Below, one piece after another: positions 1-12,179 of a DNA stretch of 64,000 nt; the first letter of the stretch is position 1, and every line of letters starts with the position of its first letter. Below the pieces are notes generated by a model that did no database searches, was not told where the DNA came from, and was given only the letters and a program-made list of their open reading frames with translations. The translations under genes and the position numbers were made by a program. This DNA comes from Heteronotia binoei (lineage: Eukaryota). The stretch lies in contig NC_083233.1 in the NCBI RefSeq assembly GCF_032191835.1, positions 24,304,001 to 24,368,000 of the forward strand. Reading direction: 5' to 3'.

Positions 1-277
1 CACAGCTTATGTAAAGCTAATTTAAAGCTGAAATGACATTCACAGCAGGATCAAAACATTTCCTACGTTAACTAGATAACTATTCCAACGGGTAAATCCA
101 GGTTTTCCCTGAGAGACCCCTTATTACCCAAAATGGAGAACCGACCAATCGGCCTCCATCAGAGTGTTTGTTTTTTGGCAGATGCACATACTCATTTCCA
201 GCACGTTTTGCAGAAAGGATACTAACACTTAACTACTTCGGGGACCAGCTTCAGCCCAGCTTTAAGCGCTTGCTCAC

Positions 278-307
278 CTGCTGAGCTCTGGGAGGCAGCA
301 TCTGCTT
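278..307 (-). CDS. AIFM1: Candidate 30-nt symmetric micro-exon of AIFM1 downstream of exon 3, encoding (E)ADAASQSSA
   Basis: Minus strand reads tcttctctcttttcag|AAGCAGATGCTGCCTCCCAGAGCTCAGCAG|gtgagc. Strong pyrimidine tract and donor; phase 1/1 matches the exon 3 end; no stop codon. Confidence 0.6.
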
Positions 308-949
308 CTGAAAAGAGAGAAGACGTGGTTTGGCGAGACGCCCAAGCCCAGGTAAACAGAATGCATTTCACACAGCACAAGTCAGTCCAGCATGCTCAGG
401 GACGGATTAGCAATTAGGCTAAGTAGGCACTGCCCTATGGGCCCCCTTGCCTTTAGGGGCCCTGGACCAGCTTCCCCCCCATTTCCCCCCTTGCTTGCAG
501 CCCTTCCAGCCTGCACATAAAGCCAGCAACTGAGCCGCTCTTTGCCTTGACTTGCCTGGTGTCATCACCAAGTTTGTCCCTCTCTGCCTCTCCCCTGCAG
601 CTTTGTCAAAGGGGCTTTTGAGAAGATGGCTGCAGGGGGGCCATGGGTGGTGGGGCAGGGACTCTGAGATAATCTGCAAGGGGGCTCCTGAGATTTCAAC
701 TGCGTAGGGGCCTCCACAGGGTTTAATCCGGCACTGAGCGTGCTATTTACAGAGATGCTAGAAATGGCAAACGGGGATCCACGCATATCCTGCTACAGAA
801 AAACTGCCCCCCTCCCCACCTTCTGTACTTACATGCTGAGAAACCTCCTTCTTTGACCAGGTAGCTTGAAGCTCTTTCCACCCCAATCCCATGACAGGCT
901 GATAATCTGAAGTTTGCAAGGGACCTCCCCGCAACCGTCGAACACCTAC

Positions 950-1043
950 CTGCTGGAGGCTTCCCATCTTGCTGGTGCCTCATTTCCAGGGATGAAATTC
1001 GCTCATGGTAACGTCGCTGGTCTTCTTTCAGCATCCTGTAAAC
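950..1043 (-). CDS. AIFM1: AIFM1 exon 3 (VYRMLKEDQRRYHERISSLEMRHQQDGKPPA)
   Basis: tctttag| acceptor and CAG|gtaggt donor; 94 nt, phase 0 to 1; resembles human AYKTMKEDEKRYNERISGL. Confidence 0.93.
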
Positions 1044-2232
1044 CTAAAGAGTCAAGCAGGGGACGTCTGTCATCTCCTTGCTGGGCAAGCTCAGCTTCCA
1101 AATGTATAGAGTGCTTTAGGCGTTCATACAGAGAGCCAACAGGTTTTTGTCTCCCTTGCAGACTCAAGGAAAGCTGCAGAGGTTGCTCAGCTTGGCAGGG
1201 AAGACTCTACAGGGGGTCCTGTATTTATGCAAAAACCCTGGGCATGAACAGGAAGAAGGAGCATGAGGCTCCTGTTTGACAGACAGGCAAAGGAGGAAGC
1301 AGCTGCCCCTCCCCCAAAAAACTCTGCTACTGACAACAAACCGAGGCTTTTAACAACTATGAAATATTCTTAAGTAGGCATCAGCAACTGCTAACAGTTG
1401 CTCAGATTTGGTCCCCCGACAAGTCGTTAGTTTTATTCTTGTATTTCAGTAGAATGTTATTCATTTTTGTTTCTAGTCTGATTTAGTGAACTGCTTCAAA
1501 GACCGCCGACTGTTTGGAGTGCAGGAAAAGCAGCACACAGGTATTTCAAACCACTAATTATAATAGCAAACTGGCAGACCTCTGTGCCAATCATAAAAAC
1601 AGCAAAAGTAGGCCACCCATAGACAACCTAGGGGGTCTCTACGTCCTCAAGGGACTTCCCAGGTTTCCAAGAAAAAACAGAGCTTTGTAGATCAAAAGGG
1701 AAAAAAATCAAACTTGACCTGATGAGGACTAAATATGCCTCTAAAAGGGTGGAATGTTGAGAGTAGCTGAGAGCTCATGAAAGGAAAACTAACCCGCTCA
1801 AGCTCCTGGGAATTTAAAGAATCTTGGAGGAGAAAGATTTTGCAGGGATTTTCTGGATATTCCCCACTCCTGTGGTTCTTTGAGAGAAGTCATTTGTAAA
1901 TAAAATCTCAAACTAGGGGTGACTTAGGAGATGCCGGGGTGGCTTTGGGATCTGCCAGCACTCTGGAAAACAGTAGGAGGGTTCTACCCAGCCAGCCTCA
2001 AAGTGGCTTCACAAAAAAAATACATGCTGCCTCCAGGGAATTTTTTTTTACACAAAGTCAACTCTATGGATAGCTCAAGACTGTCTGTAGGCTACTTTGG
2101 TTTTGGACTTCCCCTCCCCAGAAATTAAATAAATCCAGCAAAGCTCTCGGAAAGGGAAATAAGCAACTCAGTAGAACAGCAGAACTCAGTAGAACAGTGT
2201 ATCTCTCAGCTAGAACCAAAATCTCAAGGATA

Positions 2233-2490
2233 CTGGATTTATATCCCATCCTATACTCTGAATCTCAGAGCAGTCACAATCTCCTTTACCTTTTCCCCCC
2301 ACAACAGACACCCTGTGAGGTAGGTGGGGCTGAGAGAGCTTTCACAGCAGCTGCCCTTTCAAGGACAACTCCTGCAAGAGCTATGGCTGACCCAAGGCCA
2401 TTCCAGCAGGTGCAAGTGGAGGAGTGGAGAATTAAACCCGGTTCTCCCAGATAAGAGTCCGTGCACTTAACCACTACACCAAACTGGCTC
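2233..2490 (-). mobile_element. Squam3-like tRNA/CORE SINE
   Basis: tRNA-like head (revcomp of ccactacaccaaactggct), cctcacagggtgtctgttgtg core, ataaatcca tail; more than 10 similar copies in the window. Confidence 0.85.
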
Positions 2491-3424
2491 CACCAAACTG
2501 GATAATGGGAGAGGAGGAAGACCGAGGTAGAGGAAAGGTAAATAGAACAGCAACTTGTATCAAATGCTAGAAGTGAAAGTGTGCAAAAACCTTAAGGCGA
2601 CACAGAGCAATGCAGGAGATAAACAACATGAGAACACCAGCAAACACAAATGAGAAGCTGGGTCTTCAGGAAAGAATAGCGTCATAGATTCATGCAAAGA
2701 CTACAGCGTCCACAGGGACCTTGCAAGGGCTATGACAACAAGAATGATAGGTATACTGCCTGGATTCCTGCCCCTGATTACTAAACAGCTTTGAGGAATG
2801 AGGGCATAAGTTTGGTTGGTAAAGGAAATGCTGGCTTCATGTTCTAGGGTCCTGGGCAAAGGTCCTGGGCTCTGAAGTCCCAATAAACCCACGTGAACAA
2901 AGGGATGGATAGCAAACATTCCAGGGAAGGGGGGGGGGAACCACTTCTCATTGGGAGAACTCTGTATTTACCAAGTCACAGGTTCAATCCCTTCCATCGC
3001 CAGTCAGAAAGGGTATCGAGCATCAGGGATGAAAAACAAACTCCTTGAGTTCATGGAAGGCTGCTGCTAGTCAACCATGGACAAAATGGACTGACAGCAG
3101 GAGTCAGTATAAGGCAGCTTCATATATTCCACAATGTTATAGAAAATGAAAAAAAGAAAATGCCGTTTGCAATTTACATGGGTTTTTGGAAGCAGTGGTG
3201 ACGATATCGCAAATGCAGAGCAAGAAGACATCCGTGAATCTATGGGCAAGGGGAACACTGCAGTATTTCACTGTACTCTAACATGGTGTCCCCTTCAAAA
3301 TCAATAAAGAGGCAGTCTGTCACAGCACTGGATCCTCTCATTTTAATTCCCTTGGCGCACAGGCACACACGCACACTCCTCCTCCCATTAGCCTCACAAC
3401 CATGCACAACAATAAACCTCTAAC

Positions 3425-3541
3425 ATAGTTGCTTGCTCCTCCCACCATTAAGCAGCACACAAGCTTGTTGCTGTCCTTGCTGGGAGCCCCTGGGAAAGAT
3501 TAGCCATCAAGAAGGGGGTCTGAGATACGGCCACTGAAAAA
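3425..3541 (-). pseudogene. AIFM1: Decayed orthologue of the mutually exclusive AIFM1 exon 2b (AIF2 isoform)
   Basis: ctgcag|TTTTTCAGTGG...AACTAT|gttaga. Phase-1 frame gives VFQWPYLRPPS* (TGA at 3509-3507); a shifted frame gives GAPSKDSNKLVCCLMVGGASNY. Compare recalled human 2b VVQSHHLGSPSRSLASTGASGKDGSNLVYFLIVGATVTGAGVYY. Confidence 0.8.
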
Positions 3542-3711
3542 CTGCAGATGGAGACAGGCAAGGGGAGAAGAGAAGAAGAAACAGGAAAGGGGTAGAGAGA
3601 TCGTCAGGTGTTAAAATGAGCACACTGCCTTGGGGTGAGCAAGGTTTCTTATTTTGTCTGCAACTTTCTTTGCCAAAACTGGCATGGCTGTAAAGCAGAT
3701 GTCAACATCGG

Positions 3712-3905
3712 TCACATTTCCATATCCTGCCCTCCCTCCAAGGAGCTCCAGGCAGGGTACATCCTCCTCCTCGGTTTTATCCTTGCGACAACCCTGTGAG
3801 GTAGTCTAGGTTCCAAAATGAGCAGCAGTTGGCTCCAGATCAGTGAGCTTTGTGGCTGAGTGGGAATTTGAACCTGGGTCTTCCTAACCCTGTACAAGGC
3901 TCTCT
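3712..3905 (-). mobile_element. Older MIR/Squam3-like SINE
   Basis: acaaccctgtgaggtag core and gaatttgaacctgggtct B-box, diverged. Confidence 0.65.
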
Positions 3906-4260
3906 AAGCCCTTCTACCAGACTCAACCTTGTGATTAAGCTTTGTTCATTTAAACTACTTGAAGGCCTCTTTTATTCCTTAATCATTCCTGATTTGGCAT
4001 TCTCCATTAAAAAAGGAGGCCTTGTTCAGAAGCCGAGGCCACCTGCCCCTAAGCAGCTGGGGAGCGGGCAAGGTGAGCAGAGAACACCACCTTTTCAGAT
4101 AGACTTGCTATATTTTAACAAAATCTTCACCAAGTGTGGATGTTAGGTAGGCAAATGCCTGATCCCCAGATCTAGCAGATTCCCCCACCCCCATTTCCCT
4201 TTGCCTATTTTGCTAGGGGCTCTAACAACATTACTGTTTGGGGAGTATTTTGTATACTCT

Positions 4261-4488
4261 GTGTGTGTGCACACACGAGTCTCTGCACCTGGAAGTCATG
4301 TCGACCTCTGGTGACTGACTCCTACTGGGGCCTGGAGGATATTCAGAGAGGTGGTTGAATAAAGCCTGCCCCTGTCCTCTTGACTGGGTATTTCAAGGAA
4401 GTCTCCCACCAAGTACTAACCACAGTCGACCCTGCTTAGCTTTCGACAACCGATGAAATCAGGCATGCCTGGGCTATCAGGGTGAGGG
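4261..4488 (-). mobile_element. 5S rRNA-derived SINE (SINE3 type)
   Basis: Revcomp contains gaaagctaagcagggtcg...ggttagtacttggtgggagac (5S internal control region), a non-5S body and a (CA)n tail; sister copy at 6471-6685. Confidence 0.8.
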
Positions 4489-5089
4489 AAAACATTACTT
4501 TCTTAGTATAATGAGGAAAACAGCTAGCATTGTACAAAAGGCAGAAATGATTCCAAGCATTCTTCTCTGTCACTCAAGACAACTGAGACCTTTCAGTAGT
4601 TTCCTCCTGGGTGCAGTTTGTGGCTCGTTATCGCTTGTTTAGGAATCACACAACATCACTTAAATTGTATTTGCATTTATTCACTTACTAGTAATAAAGC
4701 CTGTCGTTGGGGGAAAATACAAGGTGCTAGAAATTTGCTTTATTTTATATATTTATTTATGCACCCCGCTTTTCTCCCCAGGCGGAACTCAAAGCAGCTT
4801 ATTTATTTTATTTATTTATATGTTCCATTCATAAATTGCCTATTCCCCACAACGCAAGGGTCTAGGTGATGTACAACCATCAAAAATAAGTTAAAACAAA
4901 AACTAAAAATGGACGACTACATTATTTCAGATGGTGTCAGACGTTCCTTCACTGCCCTGCTCTGGGCTGTAATTCGCAGGCAGGTGAGAAGAGGACAAAA
5001 GCAAAGATGGAGGGGAAAAGAAAGAGGAGGATAGAAGTAGGGTGCCACGTATGATGAAACTGTTGCTAGACTCAACCAACAGCCTAGTG

Positions 5090-5349
5090 CAGGAGTGGCC
5101 AAACTGTGGCTCACTTCACACAAATGACTCTTTCACACATGTTGTGTGGTTCTCAGAGCCCCCATGCATTTCTCTCTTTAAATCATTTCTCTAAGCCAAG
5201 CCAGCCAGCAGCTTGGAGAATGCATTTAAAGTTGCTTTCTTTCAACCTCTCCCTCCCAAATCTATTTTTTTCCTTCCTGTCCTGCAGCTCTCAAACAACT
5301 GACATTTATTCTATGTGGCTCCTACATTAAGCAAGTTTGGCCATCCCTG
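5090..5349. mobile_element. hAT MITE family A
   Basis: TIRs caggagtggccaaact / aagtttggccatccctg; exact 8-bp TSD gcctagtg. Confidence 0.9.
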
Positions 5350-6470
5350 GCCTAGTGGAACATCTCTGTGGCTCTGTGGAATTTCATTAAGTCCTGCAAG
5401 TTCCACCAGGTCTAGTTGAGGACAGCCGGATATCTTTAGAACCAGGGACCACCAGCTTTGAACATCATGTTCCCTTCCCTTGTGAGGTAGGTCAGGCTGA
5501 GCGTATGTCACGAGTTCAAGGTCACCCAGCAAGCTTTCATGACAGAAGTAGGGATTTGAATCCAGGTCACCCAGCAGCCTAACCCAACACTCTACCTGCT
5601 ATGCCATGCCAGCAGGGGTTTGCATCTTTGTAACAATGAGCCCTGCAGTATGGAACTCATCCCCTTGAGATATCAATAAAAACATGCCTGCAGTCTTTCC
5701 CCCTCCCTATTATGCAAGTGCAGGACTTACTGTTGCTTAGCCTTCCTCCACCATTCCCCCCTTTAAAAGGTTTTACTGCACGCCATACTTTACATATATA
5801 AGGCCCCAAATACAAGCTAAAGTTTTCCCCCTTAAAGGATCTGAGGCAGGTCAGAATTCTAATCTAAGGCGACTGCTGCCAGTCAAAGCAGTTTACCAAC
5901 CTGGGGTAGACAGACCACTGGTCTGATTCTTACCTTCCTCGCTCCCAGTGCCACCTTCCTAGACAGTCATCCCATACACGAGCAAGTCACACGAGGTGAG
6001 CAACCTGAAGCAGATCTACCCAGAAGTAATTCCCATTTTATTGGGGCTTGTTCCCAGGTAAGTATTCTTAGAACTGCAACTTCAGACCTTCCCCCTTCTC
6101 CACCTCCCCAGGATTTGGATCATTACATATTTTCATGATTTTAGGATGCCTTCAATGGTGTTGTGGATTTTATGAAGTTGGAAGCTGCCTTGAAGATTCC
6201 TTTTTCACAATGGGGAACAGAAACATTTTTCTCTTTCCAGTGGGAGACACCAATACCAAATCAGAGCCTGTTAGGGGGAAGAGGCACTCACCAATGGATG
6301 CCTTTTCTATTTAAAAAAAAGTCTACTTCTGCACATAGCAAGCTCTCTGAAATATAGCAGCTTCAACCAAGATGAGCTTAGAACCTTAATGAGTTGAGAA
6401 CTTTGATTCAATGGGATGACCCTAACCAAAGCTTCCTGCAGATCCAGGCAGGTTAAAATCTCAGAAGTTT

Positions 6471-6685
6471 GCCCTGACCTGGATAGGCCAGGAAAGTCCA
6501 ATCTTGTCAGATCTTGGAGGCACCTCGCAAGTACTTGGATGGGAGACCTTTTTGGAATGCCAGTAGTCAGGAGGACAGGGAAAGGATTTATTCAGCCACT
6601 TTCCTGAATATCCTCCAGACCCACAGTAGGGGTCAGTCACCAGAAGTCATCATGACTTCCAGGTGCAGACACACACACAAAACAC
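6471..6685 (+). mobile_element. 5S rRNA-derived SINE
   Basis: agtacttggatgggagacc 5S box C; body shared with 4261-4488; ends catgacttccaggtgcaga(ca)n. Confidence 0.78.
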
Positions 6686-7373
6686 ACTTTTAAACATCTA
6701 TATAAAAATATGTTTTAAAAATCTCAGAGGTTTATTCTTCCCACCCATGGGCCCTACTAGTTTGGAATACATTTTAAAGTAGAATTTAAATAGACTGGCT
6801 TTTTTTTTTTAGGCTACTGTAAGACAGAAAGGGAACTCTTACACCTAAAGAATTTGCATCTGACAGGTCTCCAAGAATAACCAGACATGTATCAGCAGCT
6901 TAAGAGAAGAAAGAAAGTGACTGGCTCAGCTGCTGCTAAGAAGGTCACGATCACAGAAGGATCACAACTGACCAAACTAAACACATCTGTTTTGACATCC
7001 ATGAAAGCAATAGCCTGTGTGTCAACCCATGCGAGTGTCCCACTACGGAAGGAAAATCACCACCATTAGCTACAACGCTGAGCTGATTTGTATGCAGACT
7101 CAAGGCAACAGGCCAAGCGCTATGCAAGTTCTATACATGTACTAAGCACCCCTCTATCTAATGAGGCAGCAAGGATAACAACCAGAGGGGAAGATGTTAA
7201 CATGGAGTCAATCCCAGGTTTATTTCCTTAGGGCACTAAAATTTCTGTGAGATTCTGCAGAGAAAGAAGGCTAGAAAACAGAGATGAGCAACAACAGGAG
7301 CATAAACTAAAGAGGAGCCACCACGTAGTTGGATACGTTGCTCTTTCACTCCCCATCAAAGCTTTCTACTTAC

Positions 7374-7513
7374 ATAGACCCCTCCTCCTAAGGTTGATAA
7401 GCCCACGAGGAGGACCAAGGCAGTAGTATCGTTTTTGCCCCCAGGAATGCCAGAGCTCATTTGTCTGCTCAGCTGTGCTTCTAAGGGAAGTTTCCATCGC
7501 TGAAACAAGTTAC
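7374..7513 (-). CDS. AIFM1: AIFM1 exon 2a ([47 protein letters not shown]): presequence cleavage region and TM anchor
   Basis: gttttag| and TAT|gtaagt; 140 nt, phase 1 to 0; close to human [23 protein letters not shown]...SVLVLIVGLSTVGAGAY. Confidence 0.95.
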
Positions 7514-8596
7514 CTAAAACACACAATTTGTTAGGGAGGGAAAATTGTCAATAATGAACTTAAAAGACAACAGTATTCATTAAATCATCAGGACAGTGGA
7601 ACACAGTCCTTGTCTGAGAGCCCATTGGCATTAAAACTTGGTTACTGAGACATGTCAGTGTCAGCACAAAAACTGACCTTCTTTACCCTCCATTTCAGAG
7701 CACAAAGGAACATCAGCATTAGAAATTCCATAACAGCTGAACCCTGTTCTAAAAAACACTTATTTTTAACCCCAGCCTCTCTCTAAGGAGTACCTAAGAG
7801 CACATGCATGGCTTTTGTTTTCTGTTCTGTTCTCACTGCCATGCTGTGAAGTAAGTCTAGCTGAGTGACACAGATTTGGCCCAGGCTTTCCAAATGAGTG
7901 TCATGAATGAATAGGGAATTTGAACCAAGCATGCTTGGACATAGTCCAACACTTTATACCACATAGCCCCAACACAAGACAGTGTCGTATTCATGACCTT
8001 AGATTAAAACAGGGGCTCAGCACCAATTATTTCACCTGCATGAAAGTATTAGAGAACATCATGCAAGAACTAGAGCGTGCCTGGAAATACCTCGCAATTG
8101 TGACTGAATTCCAGTCACACTGATCTGGAATTCATGAATCTTCTCAGAGATAGATGAATAAACTGCAATTCATGCATTACATTTTCTTAAGTCATGTGAC
8201 TTGCTTAGGTGTCCCTATAAAGTTAAGTATTAAACATATATGAAGGGAGTTGTAAGGTTCTCAGGACAACACACACAGTATTCTTTCCCCATTTCTGCCT
8301 CAGCTGACAGCTTTACCACAATAGAAATGTGCTCCTTCGGCAAAGTACAGACTGACTGCTTAAAATCAGAGCAAAAAATCTGGCCTTTAACAATGCTGAT
8401 GTTGCTGAACGGTGTTTGATTGAGAAACCTTGTAACCTGACATTTTTCATTCATATCTAAAAACAAAGAAACTTGCACTGGCTGAGAATTTTATTTTGTT
8501 CATCACCATCCAACAGAAGTCCATAAAACCAGAAGTTCAAGCATTCTTCGTATTCATTGCTAAAAACAGCAGAGAGGGCAGGATAAAAATCTAAGG

Positions 8597-8795
8597 CAGG
8601 GCTAATTTTTGTAGAGAAAGCCCAGCAGGAACTAATATGCATATTAGGCCACACCCCCTGATGTCACCATTGTTTCACACAGGGTATTTTATGGGGAACC
8701 CCAACAGTAACTCATTTGCATATTAGGCCACACCCTCTGATGCCAAGCTGGCTGGAACTGCATTCCTGTATGTTCCTGCTAAAAAAAAAGCCCTG
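8597..8795. mobile_element. hAT MITE, variant of palindromic family C
   Basis: TIRs cagggct...agccctg; two gcatattaggccacacc motifs; partial TSD atctaagg/atctaaat. Confidence 0.75.
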
Positions 8796-9808
8796 ATCTA
8801 AATAGAATAAATAAATTCAGTTTTAGAAATCAGATCATTTTAGGTGTCCAGAAACCCAGGTTCTATATTACCCAATTAGTTTAATATATGGACATCCCAA
8901 ATGTTGGTCTCTGCTTGTTGATTTAGTTGACCAGTACCTTGGAGACTGCTAATTCTCTATGCTGTCCTTTGATGTTTCTCAAACCAGCTGTGCTGAATTC
9001 TTCTCTCCATGGTCTTTACAATCTAATACCCTGCTACCAGATTGCAGTGTCAATCTGGATTTTGTTTTTTAAAGATGCTCTTCACAAGACTAGAGGCATG
9101 AGAGAAAAACTTTTTTAAAAAAAATAGTAATTCATCTGTACCACAACTGGGAACATTTTGATTCTGGCATTTAATTAGAAGTGACAGTTTTACTTTTCTT
9201 TATTTTTAGCTTTCTTTACTTTTAGCTATCAGATTTTTATTCTCAGGAATTCCCAGTCTGACGCTGTCACAACTAGGCCAAAACTTGCTCTCCTTTCCAA
9301 AAAGCCTAAAGGCACTTGATATTGAAGCAGCGAGCTCCAGTGAAATCTGTAGGGCTTGCTTCCAATCCAACTCGTTCGGGGAAATGCTGATCTGATTATT
9401 TACTTCAATAACTCGGGGGAAGCAATGTTTACACGTGTTACCTAACAATGATTTCCACTTACACCAGGGCCAACTTAACATGAACGACATATACGTTTTT
9501 TACTCTTTGAAACCTCGACCTTAGAGAACAGGTCACTCTGCTCTTCAGCTTCAGACAAGCGGCAGCTACACTTATGGCAACTTTGCAAGAGACCAAAAGT
9601 TTCCAACTAGTCAGTGACCGACTGCGTAACGCTTTCACGTCCACACAAAACTCCGATGTGGTTGTTTTGTTTTGTAAATAATATGCCATGCATTGACCCG
9701 TGAACCCCCCATTTTGCAATTGGGAAGAGAAGAAAGACTAAAAGGCAGCCCTCCTGGAGAGCTCCCCTCCTTTCCCCCTCGAGACCGCCCCCGGCGATTC
9801 CCTCTCAC

Positions 9809-9881
9809 CTGCCCCCGCCCGACCCCGCGACCTTGGGCCGAGCGCCCGCACCAGCCGAGCAGCCACGCGGCACCGAAACAT
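9809..9881 (-). CDS. AIFM1: AIFM1 exon 1 (MFRCRVAARLVRALGPRSRGRAGA), mitochondrial presequence
   Basis: ATG at 9881 in a CpG island; MFRC start as in human AIFM1; AG|gtgaga donor at phase 1 matches exon 2a. Confidence 0.87.
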
Positions 9882-10034
9882 GACGGCGGGGACGGCACCG
9901 AGAACTGGCCGCCGCCACCAGCTCCTCTCCTGTTCCCACACAGCCTGGAAAAAGAGCCGCTCGCTCTGCGCGTGCGCGCGCCGAGGCCCTAGCGCAGGCG
10001 TGTTTTTGGCGACGTTCTAGGACGCCGGATCTCC
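9882..10034. promoter_or_regulatory. Bidirectional CpG-island promoter of AIFM1 and MARS2 with an NRF1-like site
   Basis: 153 bp between divergent ATGs; TGCGCGTGCGCG at 9967-9978 (one mismatch to YGCGCAYGCGCR); second GCGCAGGCG nearby. Confidence 0.75.
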
Positions 10035-10332
10035 ATGCTCTTGGCGGAGCATGGGCAGCGCTGTCTTCGGAAGCTGCGCGTTCTCCGCATCATGCGGCTG
10101 CTTTGGCCCGTAGCCGCGCGCCGCTCTTCCATCTGGCCGCCGCCGCTGTGGGGGAGCCGGTGCTGCCCCCGCCGCCAAAGCTGCTCCTTCCCTGGCCGCC
10201 GCCAGCTCCTCTCCACGCCCATCTTTTATGCGAATGGCTCGCCGCACATCGGGCACCTTTACTCGGCGCTGCTGGCGGACGCGCTGCACCGGCACCGGGA
10301 GCTGCACGAGCGGGGAGGGCGCTTTGCTACCG
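10035..10332 (+). CDS. MARS2: MARS2 exon 1, mitochondrial methionyl-tRNA synthetase (presequence and HIGH motif)
   Basis: [24 protein letters not shown]; ACC G|gtcagt donor, phase 1. Confidence 0.93.
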
Positions 10333-10466
10333 GTCAGTAGGGTGGGACTGGGTGGGACGGGCGGCGGCGGCTGAAGCGCCGGGGATAAAGCCGCTGCGGA
10401 TTCCTTCTCCGGGAGGAATTGGGTGCAATAAAATTGCACGAGTTGAAGTTAGTTTTTTGTAGATAT

Positions 10467-10587
10467 ATCCAGGTGTGCAGCCGCGTTGGTCTGAAGCAAC
10501 AGAACAGTCTGAAGAAGTGTGCATGCCCACGAAAGCTTACGTTCTGAATAAAAGTTGGTTGGCCTTAAAGGACTCCTACTTTGTTCT
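10467..10587. mobile_element. Penelope-like element terminal fragment with internal inversion; carries a hammerhead motif on the + strand
   Basis: gcagccgcgttggtctgaagc head joined to ctgaagaagtgtgc...gaaagcttac...aataaa, shared with copies at about 29940, 48775 and 54700. Confidence 0.7.
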
Positions 10588-11487
10588 TAGTTTTTTTATA
10601 GTTGATGTTGCTGTTGTTTATCGCCATCTGAAATGCAGTTCTTGGGTTTTGTTTCAAACTGTTTTTTATTGTTTGTAAATCGTCGAGATCTAGAGCCTTA
10701 CCCCAGCAGGGAATAAGCGATATAATAATAATATTATTATTATTTAAAAAGACTGACGTGGCGGATCTCTTCTTTCTTTTTCTTTTTACTAAAAGATCTA
10801 TTTGTGTTTAATGTCAAACACAAATATAGGACATCAACAAAATTTTAAATTTAAGACAATGTAAACCAGAGCCCTTACAAATTCCTTCATCCCTGCTGCT
10901 TATTTCCTACAAAATATTTAAGAATTAATTTACACAGCTTTGCATGACATTTTCAATGCCAACAATTAGCCAGCTTGCACTGTGACTGCCTGCAGCATAG
11001 GACTGAGCGTGCTTTGTTGTGGAATGCTCAATGAAGACCTAGCAGGGAGCGGGGCGGCAGCTGCCCCCTCACCCCGAAAGAGGTATATGGGGAATGCCTC
11101 CAGACCTGGGGTTGGGGGGAGGGTTGCAAGCGCGAAATACATAGTTTTGGGCAAGGCAGTTACCAGGTTTTACAAATTGTTTGGGGAGAGACTGATTGTC
11201 TCTTCCTTTAAAGTTTCTATCCATGCTTCTCTTTCCTAAACTGCCCTGAATCTCTCTGGGGGACTCCAGGCCACTCAGAGACTCTCAGCCTAACCTACCT
11301 CATAGGATTGTTGTGAAGTTAGCTGTCATCATCCATAGCCATTGACAGCATTTTTCTCCATGAATATTTGTCGTTTGGGGGAGGCAAACTCATCTATGAT
11401 AGTGTGAATTGAGTTTAAATGCCAGCTGTGCTTATCAATCTGCACCTTCTCCCTATGGTCTTAATTTCTTACTGATGGGGCAAGTGC

Positions 11488-11691
11488 ATGGTTGCCAGCT
11501 CCAGATTGGAAAATTCCTGGATATTTGGGGGGGGGGGGGGTGGAGCCTGAGGAGGGGAGGGAAGGGACCTGAGGAGGGTATAATGCCATAGAATGCACAC
11601 TCCTTAACAGCAGTTTTCTCCAGGTGAACTGATCTCCTTTGTATGAAGGTCAGTTGTAATTCCAGACCCCACCTGGAGGTTGGCAGCCTTA
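11488..11691. mobile_element. hAT MITE with gggttgcca/tggcaaccct-type TIRs (Blackjack-like)
   Basis: ggttgccagctcc...ggaggttggcagcctta; related pieces at about 26975-27172 and 28537-28645. Confidence 0.65.
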
Positions 11692-11844
11692 GACAAGCAG
11701 TATGTTCTTTGCCAATATATGGAGAGAAGAGCTTGCTAATGCTATAGATGGAATTCCTGCGGTTTACCCTAGACCTTTGATGGGTTAGAGTTAGAGGCAG
11801 GATTGGATTCTTGGTCCATCATGCTCTCTTGTTTCTCTGCCCAG

Positions 11845-12179
11845 GGACAGATGAACATGGGCTGAAAATCCAGACAACAGCTGCAGCAGCAGGCAGTTTG
11901 CCTCAGCACTTCTGCGATCGGGTATCAGCAGAATTCCAGGAGCTCTTTACCCAGGCAGACATCTCTTATACTGACTTCATCCGCACCACGGAGCCACGGC
12001 ATAGACGGGCAGTGGAGCACTTCTGGATCTCCCTGCAGGACCAAGGCTGGCTTTATCGGGCCAAATACGAAGGCTGGTACTGCACAGCCGAGGAGACTTT
12101 CCTAGCGGCTTCTCAGGTCACAGAGCAATCTGACTCCCAAGGCTGCAAGCACATGGTCTCACTAGAAAGTGGCCATCAG
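11845..12179 (+). CDS. MARS2: MARS2 exon 2
   Basis: cccag|GG ACA GAT GAA CAT (GTDEHGLKI...YEGWYC); CAG|gtacca; 335 nt restores phase 0. Confidence 0.95.

What the first reader, a model, noticed from the sequence alone, without database searches (positions are those of the whole stretch)
3425..3541. AIFM1 exon 2b (brain AIF2 isoform) is present but broken: lost isoform or poison exon
Seen: between exons 2a and 3 lies a 117-nt segment with intact AG and GT. It aligns residue for residue with recalled human exon 2b (VFQWPYLRPPS* vs VVQSHHLGSPSR; GAPSKDSNKLVCCLMVGG vs GASGKDGSNLVYFLIVGA). It has TGA where human has Arg, a +1 frameshift just after, and about 15 nt missing from the TM segment (131+1-15=117). 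Known: mammalian 2a/2b are mutually exclusive and 2b gives a neuron-enriched isoform with a different anchor. Inference: exon 2b predates the mammal/reptile split and this lineage lost the coding isoform. The retained splice sites could make it an NMD-triggering exon that lowers AIF in brain.
Basis: partly seen in the sequence, partly recalled or inferred. Interest (0 to 1): 0.8.

Follow-up and report, generated by a model that had tools for sequence, protein, structure and literature searches.

The report
Dead AIFM1 exon 2b in gecko
This 117-base stretch is the decayed remnant of the alternative "brain" exon 2b of the mitochondrial gene AIFM1 in Bynoe's gecko; it is a real but ordinary case of exon loss, and nothing shows that it is still used.

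Summary
Window 3425-3541 (minus strand) lies between AIFM1 exon 2a (7374-7513) and exon 3 (950-1043). It is the ortholog of exon 2b, the exon specific to the AIF2 isoform.

- **Homology:** a DNA profile built from six other squamates with an intact 2b hits only this spot in the window (E=3e-41).
- **Species:** the genome is Heteronotia binoei.
- **Damage:** against intact orthologs the gecko copy carries AGA>TGA at codon 12, a +1 insertion in codons 15-17, and a 12-nt deletion in the membrane segment. It also has a lineage-specific donor change, GTAAG>GTTAG. All three reading frames are closed.
- **Rate of change:** its Heteronotia-specific changes are almost all amino-acid-changing. They accumulate at the intronic rate, and so do the splice flanks.
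- **Relatives:** the other gekkonid sampled, Paroedura picta, has deleted about 1.6 kb that includes the exon. Eublepharis and Sphaerodactylus keep it intact. A snake and a skink also lack it.
- **Age:** exon 2b is intact in turtles, birds, an alligator and mammals, so it predates the amniote split.
- **Poison-exon idea:** unsupported. Two RNA runs cover exon 3 and a spliced junction but give zero depth on 2b, and no RNA run was listed as holding it. Tissue is unknown and brain was not tested.
- **Not checked:** raw DNA reads were not available, so the lesions are unconfirmed in reads.

Verdict: a true pseudoexon and an old loss in Gekkonidae, of modest interest.

The parts
3425..3541 (-). Relic of AIFM1 exon 2b (AIF2-specific alternative exon), 117 nt, with all three frames closed
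   Evidence: Sequence and translation. Seven-species alignment A3. nhmmer E=3e-41.
3507..3509 (-). Premature TGA at codon 12, where orthologs have Arg (AGA in the other geckos, AGA or CGG in the other lizards)
3491..3500 (-). Region holding a +1 nucleotide insertion (codons 15-17). The exact base is ambiguous within this run.
   Evidence: A single-column gap in all six orthologs against Heteronotia.
3436..3437 (-). Junction of a 12-nt deletion that removes four codons (A/T-V-T-G) of the membrane-anchor segment
3417..3424 (-). Degraded splice donor GTTAGAGG. The T at +3 (position 3422) is unique to Heteronotia; the other six species have GTAAG.
   Evidence: Crude U1 duplex energies.
3542..3581 (-). 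Splice acceptor AG and polypyrimidine tract, still recognisable but changing at the intronic rate
7374..7513 (-). AIFM1 exon 2a (140 nt), the exon used in the annotated protein
   Evidence: tblastn of P0021.
9809..9881 (-). AIFM1 exon 1 coding part (ATG at 9881, ends in phase 1)
950..1043 (-). AIFM1 exon 3, covered by RNA contigs in runs X1 and X2
278..307 (-). 30-nt AIFM1 mini-exon after exon 3, joined to exon 3 in RNA contigs (joint 307/950)

Best explanation
The segment is a pseudoexon, the non-functional remnant of AIFM1 alternative exon 2b. In other amniotes this exon replaces exon 2a to give the AIF2 isoform, which has a different inner-membrane anchor.

In the lineage leading to Heteronotia binoei the exon stopped being maintained. 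It then accumulated a stop codon, a frameshift, a 12-nt deletion, a weakened donor and many radical amino-acid replacements. The gene now makes only the exon-2a form.

Shown: orthology, the lesions, the near-neutral pattern of change, deletion of the exon in Paroedura, and no RNA coverage in two runs.

Inferred: that the loss is old, perhaps before the Heteronotia/Paroedura split, and that the relic is now silent intron sequence.
For: - **Position:** it lies between exons 2a and 3 of AIFM1.
- **Orthology:** profile hit at E=3e-41, unique in the window. The only match in the whole genome to the Eublepharis 2b peptide is this spot.
- **Lesions:** four Heteronotia-only lesions against six intact squamate orthologs. 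All frames are closed.
- **Type of change:** about 17 amino-acid-changing versus 2 silent nucleotide changes. These fall partly at residues invariant or nearly so in the others (L2F, C4W, H6Y, S16F, Y29C, I32M).
- **Rate:** Heteronotia-specific substitutions are 11/116 in the exon and 8/80 in the splice flanks, against 102/974 in the flanking intron.
- **Relatives:** Paroedura picta lacks about 1.6 kb that includes the exon, while the flanking intron aligns collinearly. Eublepharis and Sphaerodactylus have intact exons.
- **RNA:** contigs in X1 and X2 cover exon 3 (depth 86 and 58) and the 307/950 junction but give depth 0 over 3400-3599. No RNA run was listed as holding 2b words.
Against: - No raw DNA reads could be laid, so the lesions rest on the assembly alone. 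NCBI also flags this species' AIFM1 model as LOW QUALITY.
- The acceptor and pyrimidine tract are still good, and a GT is still present.
- The rate argument is weak on its own. The intact Sphaerodactylus exon changed just as much (13/116).
- The RNA runs are small metatranscriptomic contig sets of unknown tissue, and contigs drop rare forms.
Confidence: 0.85

Rival explanations
1. Regulated poison exon. The relic is still spliced in, for example in neurons. Its stop lies 82 nt before the 2b-3 junction, so it would send the transcript to nonsense-mediated decay and lower AIF levels.
For: The acceptor AG and pyrimidine tract are retained, a GT is present, and every frame has a stop more than 55 nt upstream of the junction. 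No brain RNA was examined.
Against: - The donor carries a lineage-specific A>T at +3, and even the intact orthologs' donors are already weak.
- The exon and its flanks change at the intronic rate.
- Paroedura deleted the exon outright.
- Depth is zero in two RNA runs that do hold AIFM1 mRNA, and none was listed in the RNA index.
Confidence: 0.06
2. Assembly artefact. The exon is really intact in the animal, and one or more lesions are sequencing or assembly errors.
For: No DNA reads were available. The NCBI model for this gene is flagged LOW QUALITY.
Against: - Four independent lesions of different kinds sit in 120 nt, alongside many radical substitutions.
- A 12-nt deletion and two point changes are not typical long-read errors.
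- All 16 coding exons match the protein model without visible breaks.
Confidence: 0.03
3. Recent loss confined to Heteronotia, independent of the Paroedura deletion, rather than one old gekkonid loss.
For: The two species share no diagnosable lesion, because Paroedura has no sequence left. Only three open-reading-frame lesions have accumulated.
Against: The substitution load equals the full-branch intronic load. Two gekkonids out of two lack a working exon, while both non-gekkonid geckos keep it.
Confidence: 0.25

Closest known systems
Mammalian AIFM1 exon 2b (AIF2, brain-specific isoform; Hangen et al. 2010, as described in PMC6315035 and PMC7896227)
   Same: Same gene and same position between exons 2a and 3. 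It is clearly homologous in sequence to primate and shrew 2b-bearing isoforms (P0131, P0134, P0135).
   Different: The mammalian exon is 131 nt, open, and used in brain. This copy is 117 nt and has a stop, a frameshift, a deletion in the membrane segment and a weakened donor. No use in RNA was seen.
Intact squamate exon 2b (Eublepharis L008:6317-6445, Sphaerodactylus L007:6129-6257, Sceloporus, Podarcis, Anolis, Pogona)
   Same: Orthologous exon with the same flanking splice-region sequence. Identity to Eublepharis is 84% over the exon.
   Different: Those copies are open and in phase (125-131 nt, length 2 mod 3) with GTAAG donors. In Sphaerodactylus and Sceloporus they are annotated as mRNA isoforms.
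Poison exons coupled to nonsense-mediated decay (for example those of SR-protein genes; general knowledge)
   Same: Inclusion would introduce a premature stop well upstream of an exon junction.
   Different: Known poison exons are highly conserved and detectably included. This one changes at the intronic rate, is deleted in a relative, and shows no inclusion in the RNA available.

Membership tests
AIFM1 exon 2b (AIF2-specific alternative exon) | Lies between exon 2a and exon 3 of AIFM1, on the gene's strand | tested here: met
   Exon map.
AIFM1 exon 2b (AIF2-specific alternative exon) | Sequence homology to 2b of other species, distinct from 2a | tested here: met
   nhmmer E=3e-41. Alignment A3. 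Similarity to its own exon 2a is only weak.
AIFM1 exon 2b (AIF2-specific alternative exon) | Open reading frame in phase with exons 1 and 3 (length 2 mod 3, no stop) | tested here: not met
   117 nt (0 mod 3), TGA at codon 12, all frames closed.
AIFM1 exon 2b (AIF2-specific alternative exon) | Hydrophobic membrane-anchor segment complete | tested here: not met
   Four-codon deletion, plus Y29C and F30C.
AIFM1 exon 2b (AIF2-specific alternative exon) | Included in brain mRNA in place of exon 2a | not testable with these tools
   No brain RNA run was served. Two runs of unknown tissue show no coverage.
NMD-coupled poison exon | Inclusion creates a stop more than about 50-55 nt upstream of an exon junction | tested here: met
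   The TGA ends 82 nt before the exon's 3' end.
NMD-coupled poison exon | Detectable inclusion in RNA | tested here: inconclusive
   Depth 0 over 3400-3599 in X1 and X2, while exon 3 is covered. None was listed. The data are contigs only and the tissue is unknown.
NMD-coupled poison exon | Exon and splice flanks conserved above the neutral rate | tested here: not met
   Lineage-specific change is 9.5% in the exon and 10% in the flanks, against 10.5% in the intron. The exon is deleted in Paroedura.
Pseudoexon / exon death | Disabling lesions in one lineage while outgroup orthologs are intact, with a relaxed substitution pattern | tested here: met

The most novel reading that the evidence does not exclude
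The relic is still recognised by the splicing machinery in some neurons. There it would act as an unproductive, NMD-triggering exon that tunes AIF dosage, meaning a dead coding exon has been re-used as a regulatory switch.
Probability: 0.05. Interest if true: 0.55.

Novelty: new member of a known kind. Interest (0 to 1): 0.3.

Why it matters
AIF2 has been described only in mammals in the papers I could reach. Its physiological role is still unclear, and the knockout mouse is viable (PMC6315035).

The comparison here shows two things:
- The exon is old, at least as old as amniotes, and well conserved.
- It has nevertheless been lost in gekkonid geckos and is absent from the one snake and the one skink sampled.

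These are natural knockouts. They could help ask what the stronger membrane anchor of AIF2 is for. For the gecko genome itself the practical value is annotation: this is intron sequence, not an isoform.

Tried and rejected
- **Raw-read confirmation of the lesions:** the run search returned no DNA holder, so it was not possible.
- **RNA index query with the exon alone:** none was listed.
- **Joining 2a to 3 in one read-laying run:** the span exceeds the 6,000-letter limit, so direct 2a-3 junction evidence was not obtained. Only exon 3, the 307/950 junction and the absence of 2b were seen.
- **Rfam scan of 1-12000:** nothing.
- **Repeat origin:** rejected, because the 221-nt region is single-copy.
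- **A second intact 2b copy elsewhere in the genome:** none found.
- **Genomic look-ups for P0030, P0020 and P0061:** no record, since only the longest isoform is indexed. Python data are therefore missing.
- **Other gekkonid proteins (for example Gekko):** none found, so the lesions could not be dated within Gekkonidae.
- **The original AIF2 paper (Hangen et al. 2010):** not held.
- **U1 duplex energies:** crude and possibly out of register, so they are used only as a hint.
- **Source of the LOW QUALITY flag on the NCBI model:** all exons matched without a visible break, and the reason stays unknown.
- **Rate test as a dating tool:** weakened because the intact Sphaerodactylus exon is equally diverged.

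Full report
**What is in the window**

AIFM1 lies on the minus strand at the left end of the window.
- The exon 1 coding part runs 9881-9809 and ends in phase 1.
- Exon 2a is 7513-7374, 140 nt, with an AG acceptor and a GTAAGT donor.
- Exon 3 is 1043-950.
- A 30-nt mini-exon is at 307-278.
- The rest of the gene lies left of the window.

A protein named by NCBI as AIFM1 of Heteronotia binoei (P0021) matches these exons exactly. Its contig length, 85,482,965, equals that of the window's contig. The genome is therefore Bynoe's gecko.

**The observation**

The 117 nt at 3541-3425 (minus strand) sit between exons 2a and 3.
- They are preceded by a long pyrimidine tract and an AG, and followed by GT.
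- Entering from exon 1, the frame reads eleven codons and then TGA (3509-3507).
- The frame that would continue into exon 3 is open only in the second half.
- All three frames contain a stop.
- The region is single-copy in the 2.6-Gb genome.
- No other match to a gecko 2b peptide exists anywhere in the genome.

**Is it exon 2b?**

I did not rely on a recalled human sequence. I searched with exon 2a and then with full-length relatives.

Proteins carrying a distinct second version of exon 2 are annotated in primates and a shrew (P0131, P0135, P0134). They are also annotated in turtles, birds, an alligator, Sceloporus, Phrynosoma and the gecko Sphaerodactylus townsendi.

I then fetched AIFM1 genomic loci of nine squamates. 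An open, in-phase exon 2b lies between exons 2a and 3 in six of them:
- Eublepharis (L008:6317-6445)
- Sphaerodactylus (L007:6129-6257)
- Sceloporus (L009:5873-6001)
- Podarcis (L010:6574-6702)
- Anolis (L012:3769-3900)
- Pogona (L013:6823-6948)

The seven-species DNA alignment (A3) shows that the Heteronotia segment is the ortholog, including 40 nt of conserved splice flank on each side. A profile built from the six intact species, leaving Heteronotia out, hits window 3577-3390(-) at E=3e-41. Nothing else in the window scores below E=0.2.

**The lesions**

Four lesions are unique to Heteronotia against those six orthologs:
- AGA>TGA at codon 12.
- One extra base within codons 15-17 (window 3491-3500).
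- A clean 12-nt deletion removing four codons of the hydrophobic anchor (junction 3437/3436).
- The donor changed from GTAAG to GTTAG (T at 3422).

Squamate 2b is 128 nt, so 128+1-12=117.

The remaining Heteronotia-specific changes are almost all amino-acid-changing, roughly 17 against 2 silent nucleotide changes. They fall partly at positions invariant or nearly so in the others: L2F, C4W, H6Y, S16F, Y29C and I32M.

**Age of the loss**

I used Eublepharis as the reference in a three-way comparison.

| Lineage | Exon 2b | 40-nt splice flanks | Filtered flanking intron |
|---|---|---|---|
| Heteronotia-specific | 11/116 (9.5%) | 8/80 (10%) | 102/974 (10.5%) |
| Eublepharis plus stem | 3.4% | not computed as a rate | 8.8% |

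The relic and its splice signals have therefore changed about as fast as the intron over the whole branch since the split from Sphaerodactylidae. On the Eublepharis-plus-stem branch, by contrast, the exon changed much less than the intron.

One caveat applies. The intact Sphaerodactylus exon also changed a lot (13/116), so the rate alone does not prove early loss.

Independent support comes from Paroedura picta, the only other gekkonid I could obtain. Its intron 2 aligns collinearly with Heteronotia and Eublepharis at 70-78% identity. However, about 1.65 kb of Eublepharis sequence containing exon 2b (L008 5651-7306) collapses to 57 nt in Paroedura (L006 5422-5479).

So both gekkonids lack a working exon, while both non-gekkonid geckos keep one. 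A single old loss in Gekkonidae is the simplest reading, but two separate losses are not excluded.

**Wider pattern**

No trace of 2b was found in two further species, even with unfiltered nhmmer:
- The snake Thamnophis elegans, whose intron 2 is only about 1 kb.
- The skink Lerista edwardsae, whose intron 2 is about 2.3 kb.

Lacertids and iguanians keep the exon, so these would be separate losses. Each rests on one genome.

**Is it still used?**

- No RNA run was listed as holding words of the 117 nt.
- Two metatranscriptomic RNA runs, kept as contigs and of unknown tissue, were laid on window 200-6199.
- They cover exon 3 with 0 and 2 mismatches (depth 86 and 58).
- They show the spliced joint 307/950 with minus-strand GT..AG ends.
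- They have depth 0 in both bins covering 3400-3599.

This is weak negative evidence. Contigs drop rare forms, and brain was not sampled.

If the relic were included, the stop lies 82 nt before the junction, so the transcript would be an NMD target. Several facts argue against maintained use:
- The altered donor.
- The crude U1 pairing energies: -3.5 for this donor, -4.3 for intact 2b donors, -7.0 for exon 2a, and -12 to -15 for exons 1 and 3.
- The neutral rate of the flanks.
- The outright deletion in Paroedura.

**Comparison with what is known**

Papers I could read describe AIF2 as a brain-specific mouse and human isoform. It is made by using exon 2b instead of 2a, and it has a more hydrophobic, more firmly anchored membrane segment. 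The knockout mouse is viable (PMC6315035, PMC7896227). I found no statement on non-mammalian conservation or loss, but the original paper is not held.

The relic meets the positional and homology criteria for exon 2b. It fails the open-frame and intact-anchor criteria. It is best filed as a dead ortholog of a known exon.

**Limits**

- No DNA reads were served, so the lesions rest on the assembly.
- NCBI flags the AIFM1 model of this species as LOW QUALITY. I saw no break in any coding exon.
- Four lesions of different kinds plus many radical substitutions make an artefact unlikely.

**Verdict**

The homology and loss-of-isoform readings are supported, and the poison-exon reading is not. This is an ordinary exon death with a mildly interesting phylogenetic pattern.

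Noticed in passing
L006:5422-5479 (Paroedura picta AIFM1 intron 2): About 1.65 kb that holds exon 2b in Eublepharis is missing here, while the flanking intron aligns collinearly. A second gekkonid therefore has no exon 2b at all.
   Followed up: yes
L011 (Thamnophis elegans) and L014 (Lerista edwardsae), intron 2: No exon 2b is detectable in a snake (intron 2 about 1 kb) or a skink (about 2.3 kb). These look like further independent losses in squamates, each based on one genome.
   Followed up: partly
Snake AIFM1 proteins P0061, P0095, P0114, P0117, P0126, P0127, P0129 (exon 2a and exon 3 parts): In all snakes listed, the exon 2a and exon 3 peptide is strongly diverged from other squamates. 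It has a more aromatic membrane segment and a basic stretch after it. Whether this relates to the absence of exon 2b is unknown.
   Followed up: no
window 2229-2490: A SINE-like repeat draws enormous summed RNA contig depth (over 300,000) and many rearranged joints in both RNA runs. This reflects a highly transcribed dispersed family, not this locus.
   Followed up: no
window 278-307 (-): A 30-nt AIFM1 mini-exon, which is alternative in other reptiles' isoforms, is joined to exon 3 in the RNA contigs of both runs (joint 307/950).
   Followed up: partly
P0023 (Phrynosoma), P0041 (Cariama), P0015 (Sphaerodactylus, UniRef): These gene models read exon 2a and exon 2b one after the other in a single protein. 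That looks like an annotation error for a mutually exclusive pair.
   Followed up: no
P0021 (NCBI model of Heteronotia binoei AIFM1): The model is flagged LOW QUALITY PROTEIN, yet every coding exon matched the genome without a visible frameshift or stop. The reason for the flag was not found.
   Followed up: partly
window 3534-3543 (-) and orthologs in A3: All species have two AG dinucleotides 8 nt apart at the 2b acceptor (CAG TTTTGCAG). The annotated isoforms use the first. Whether the second is ever used is unknown.
   Followed up: no
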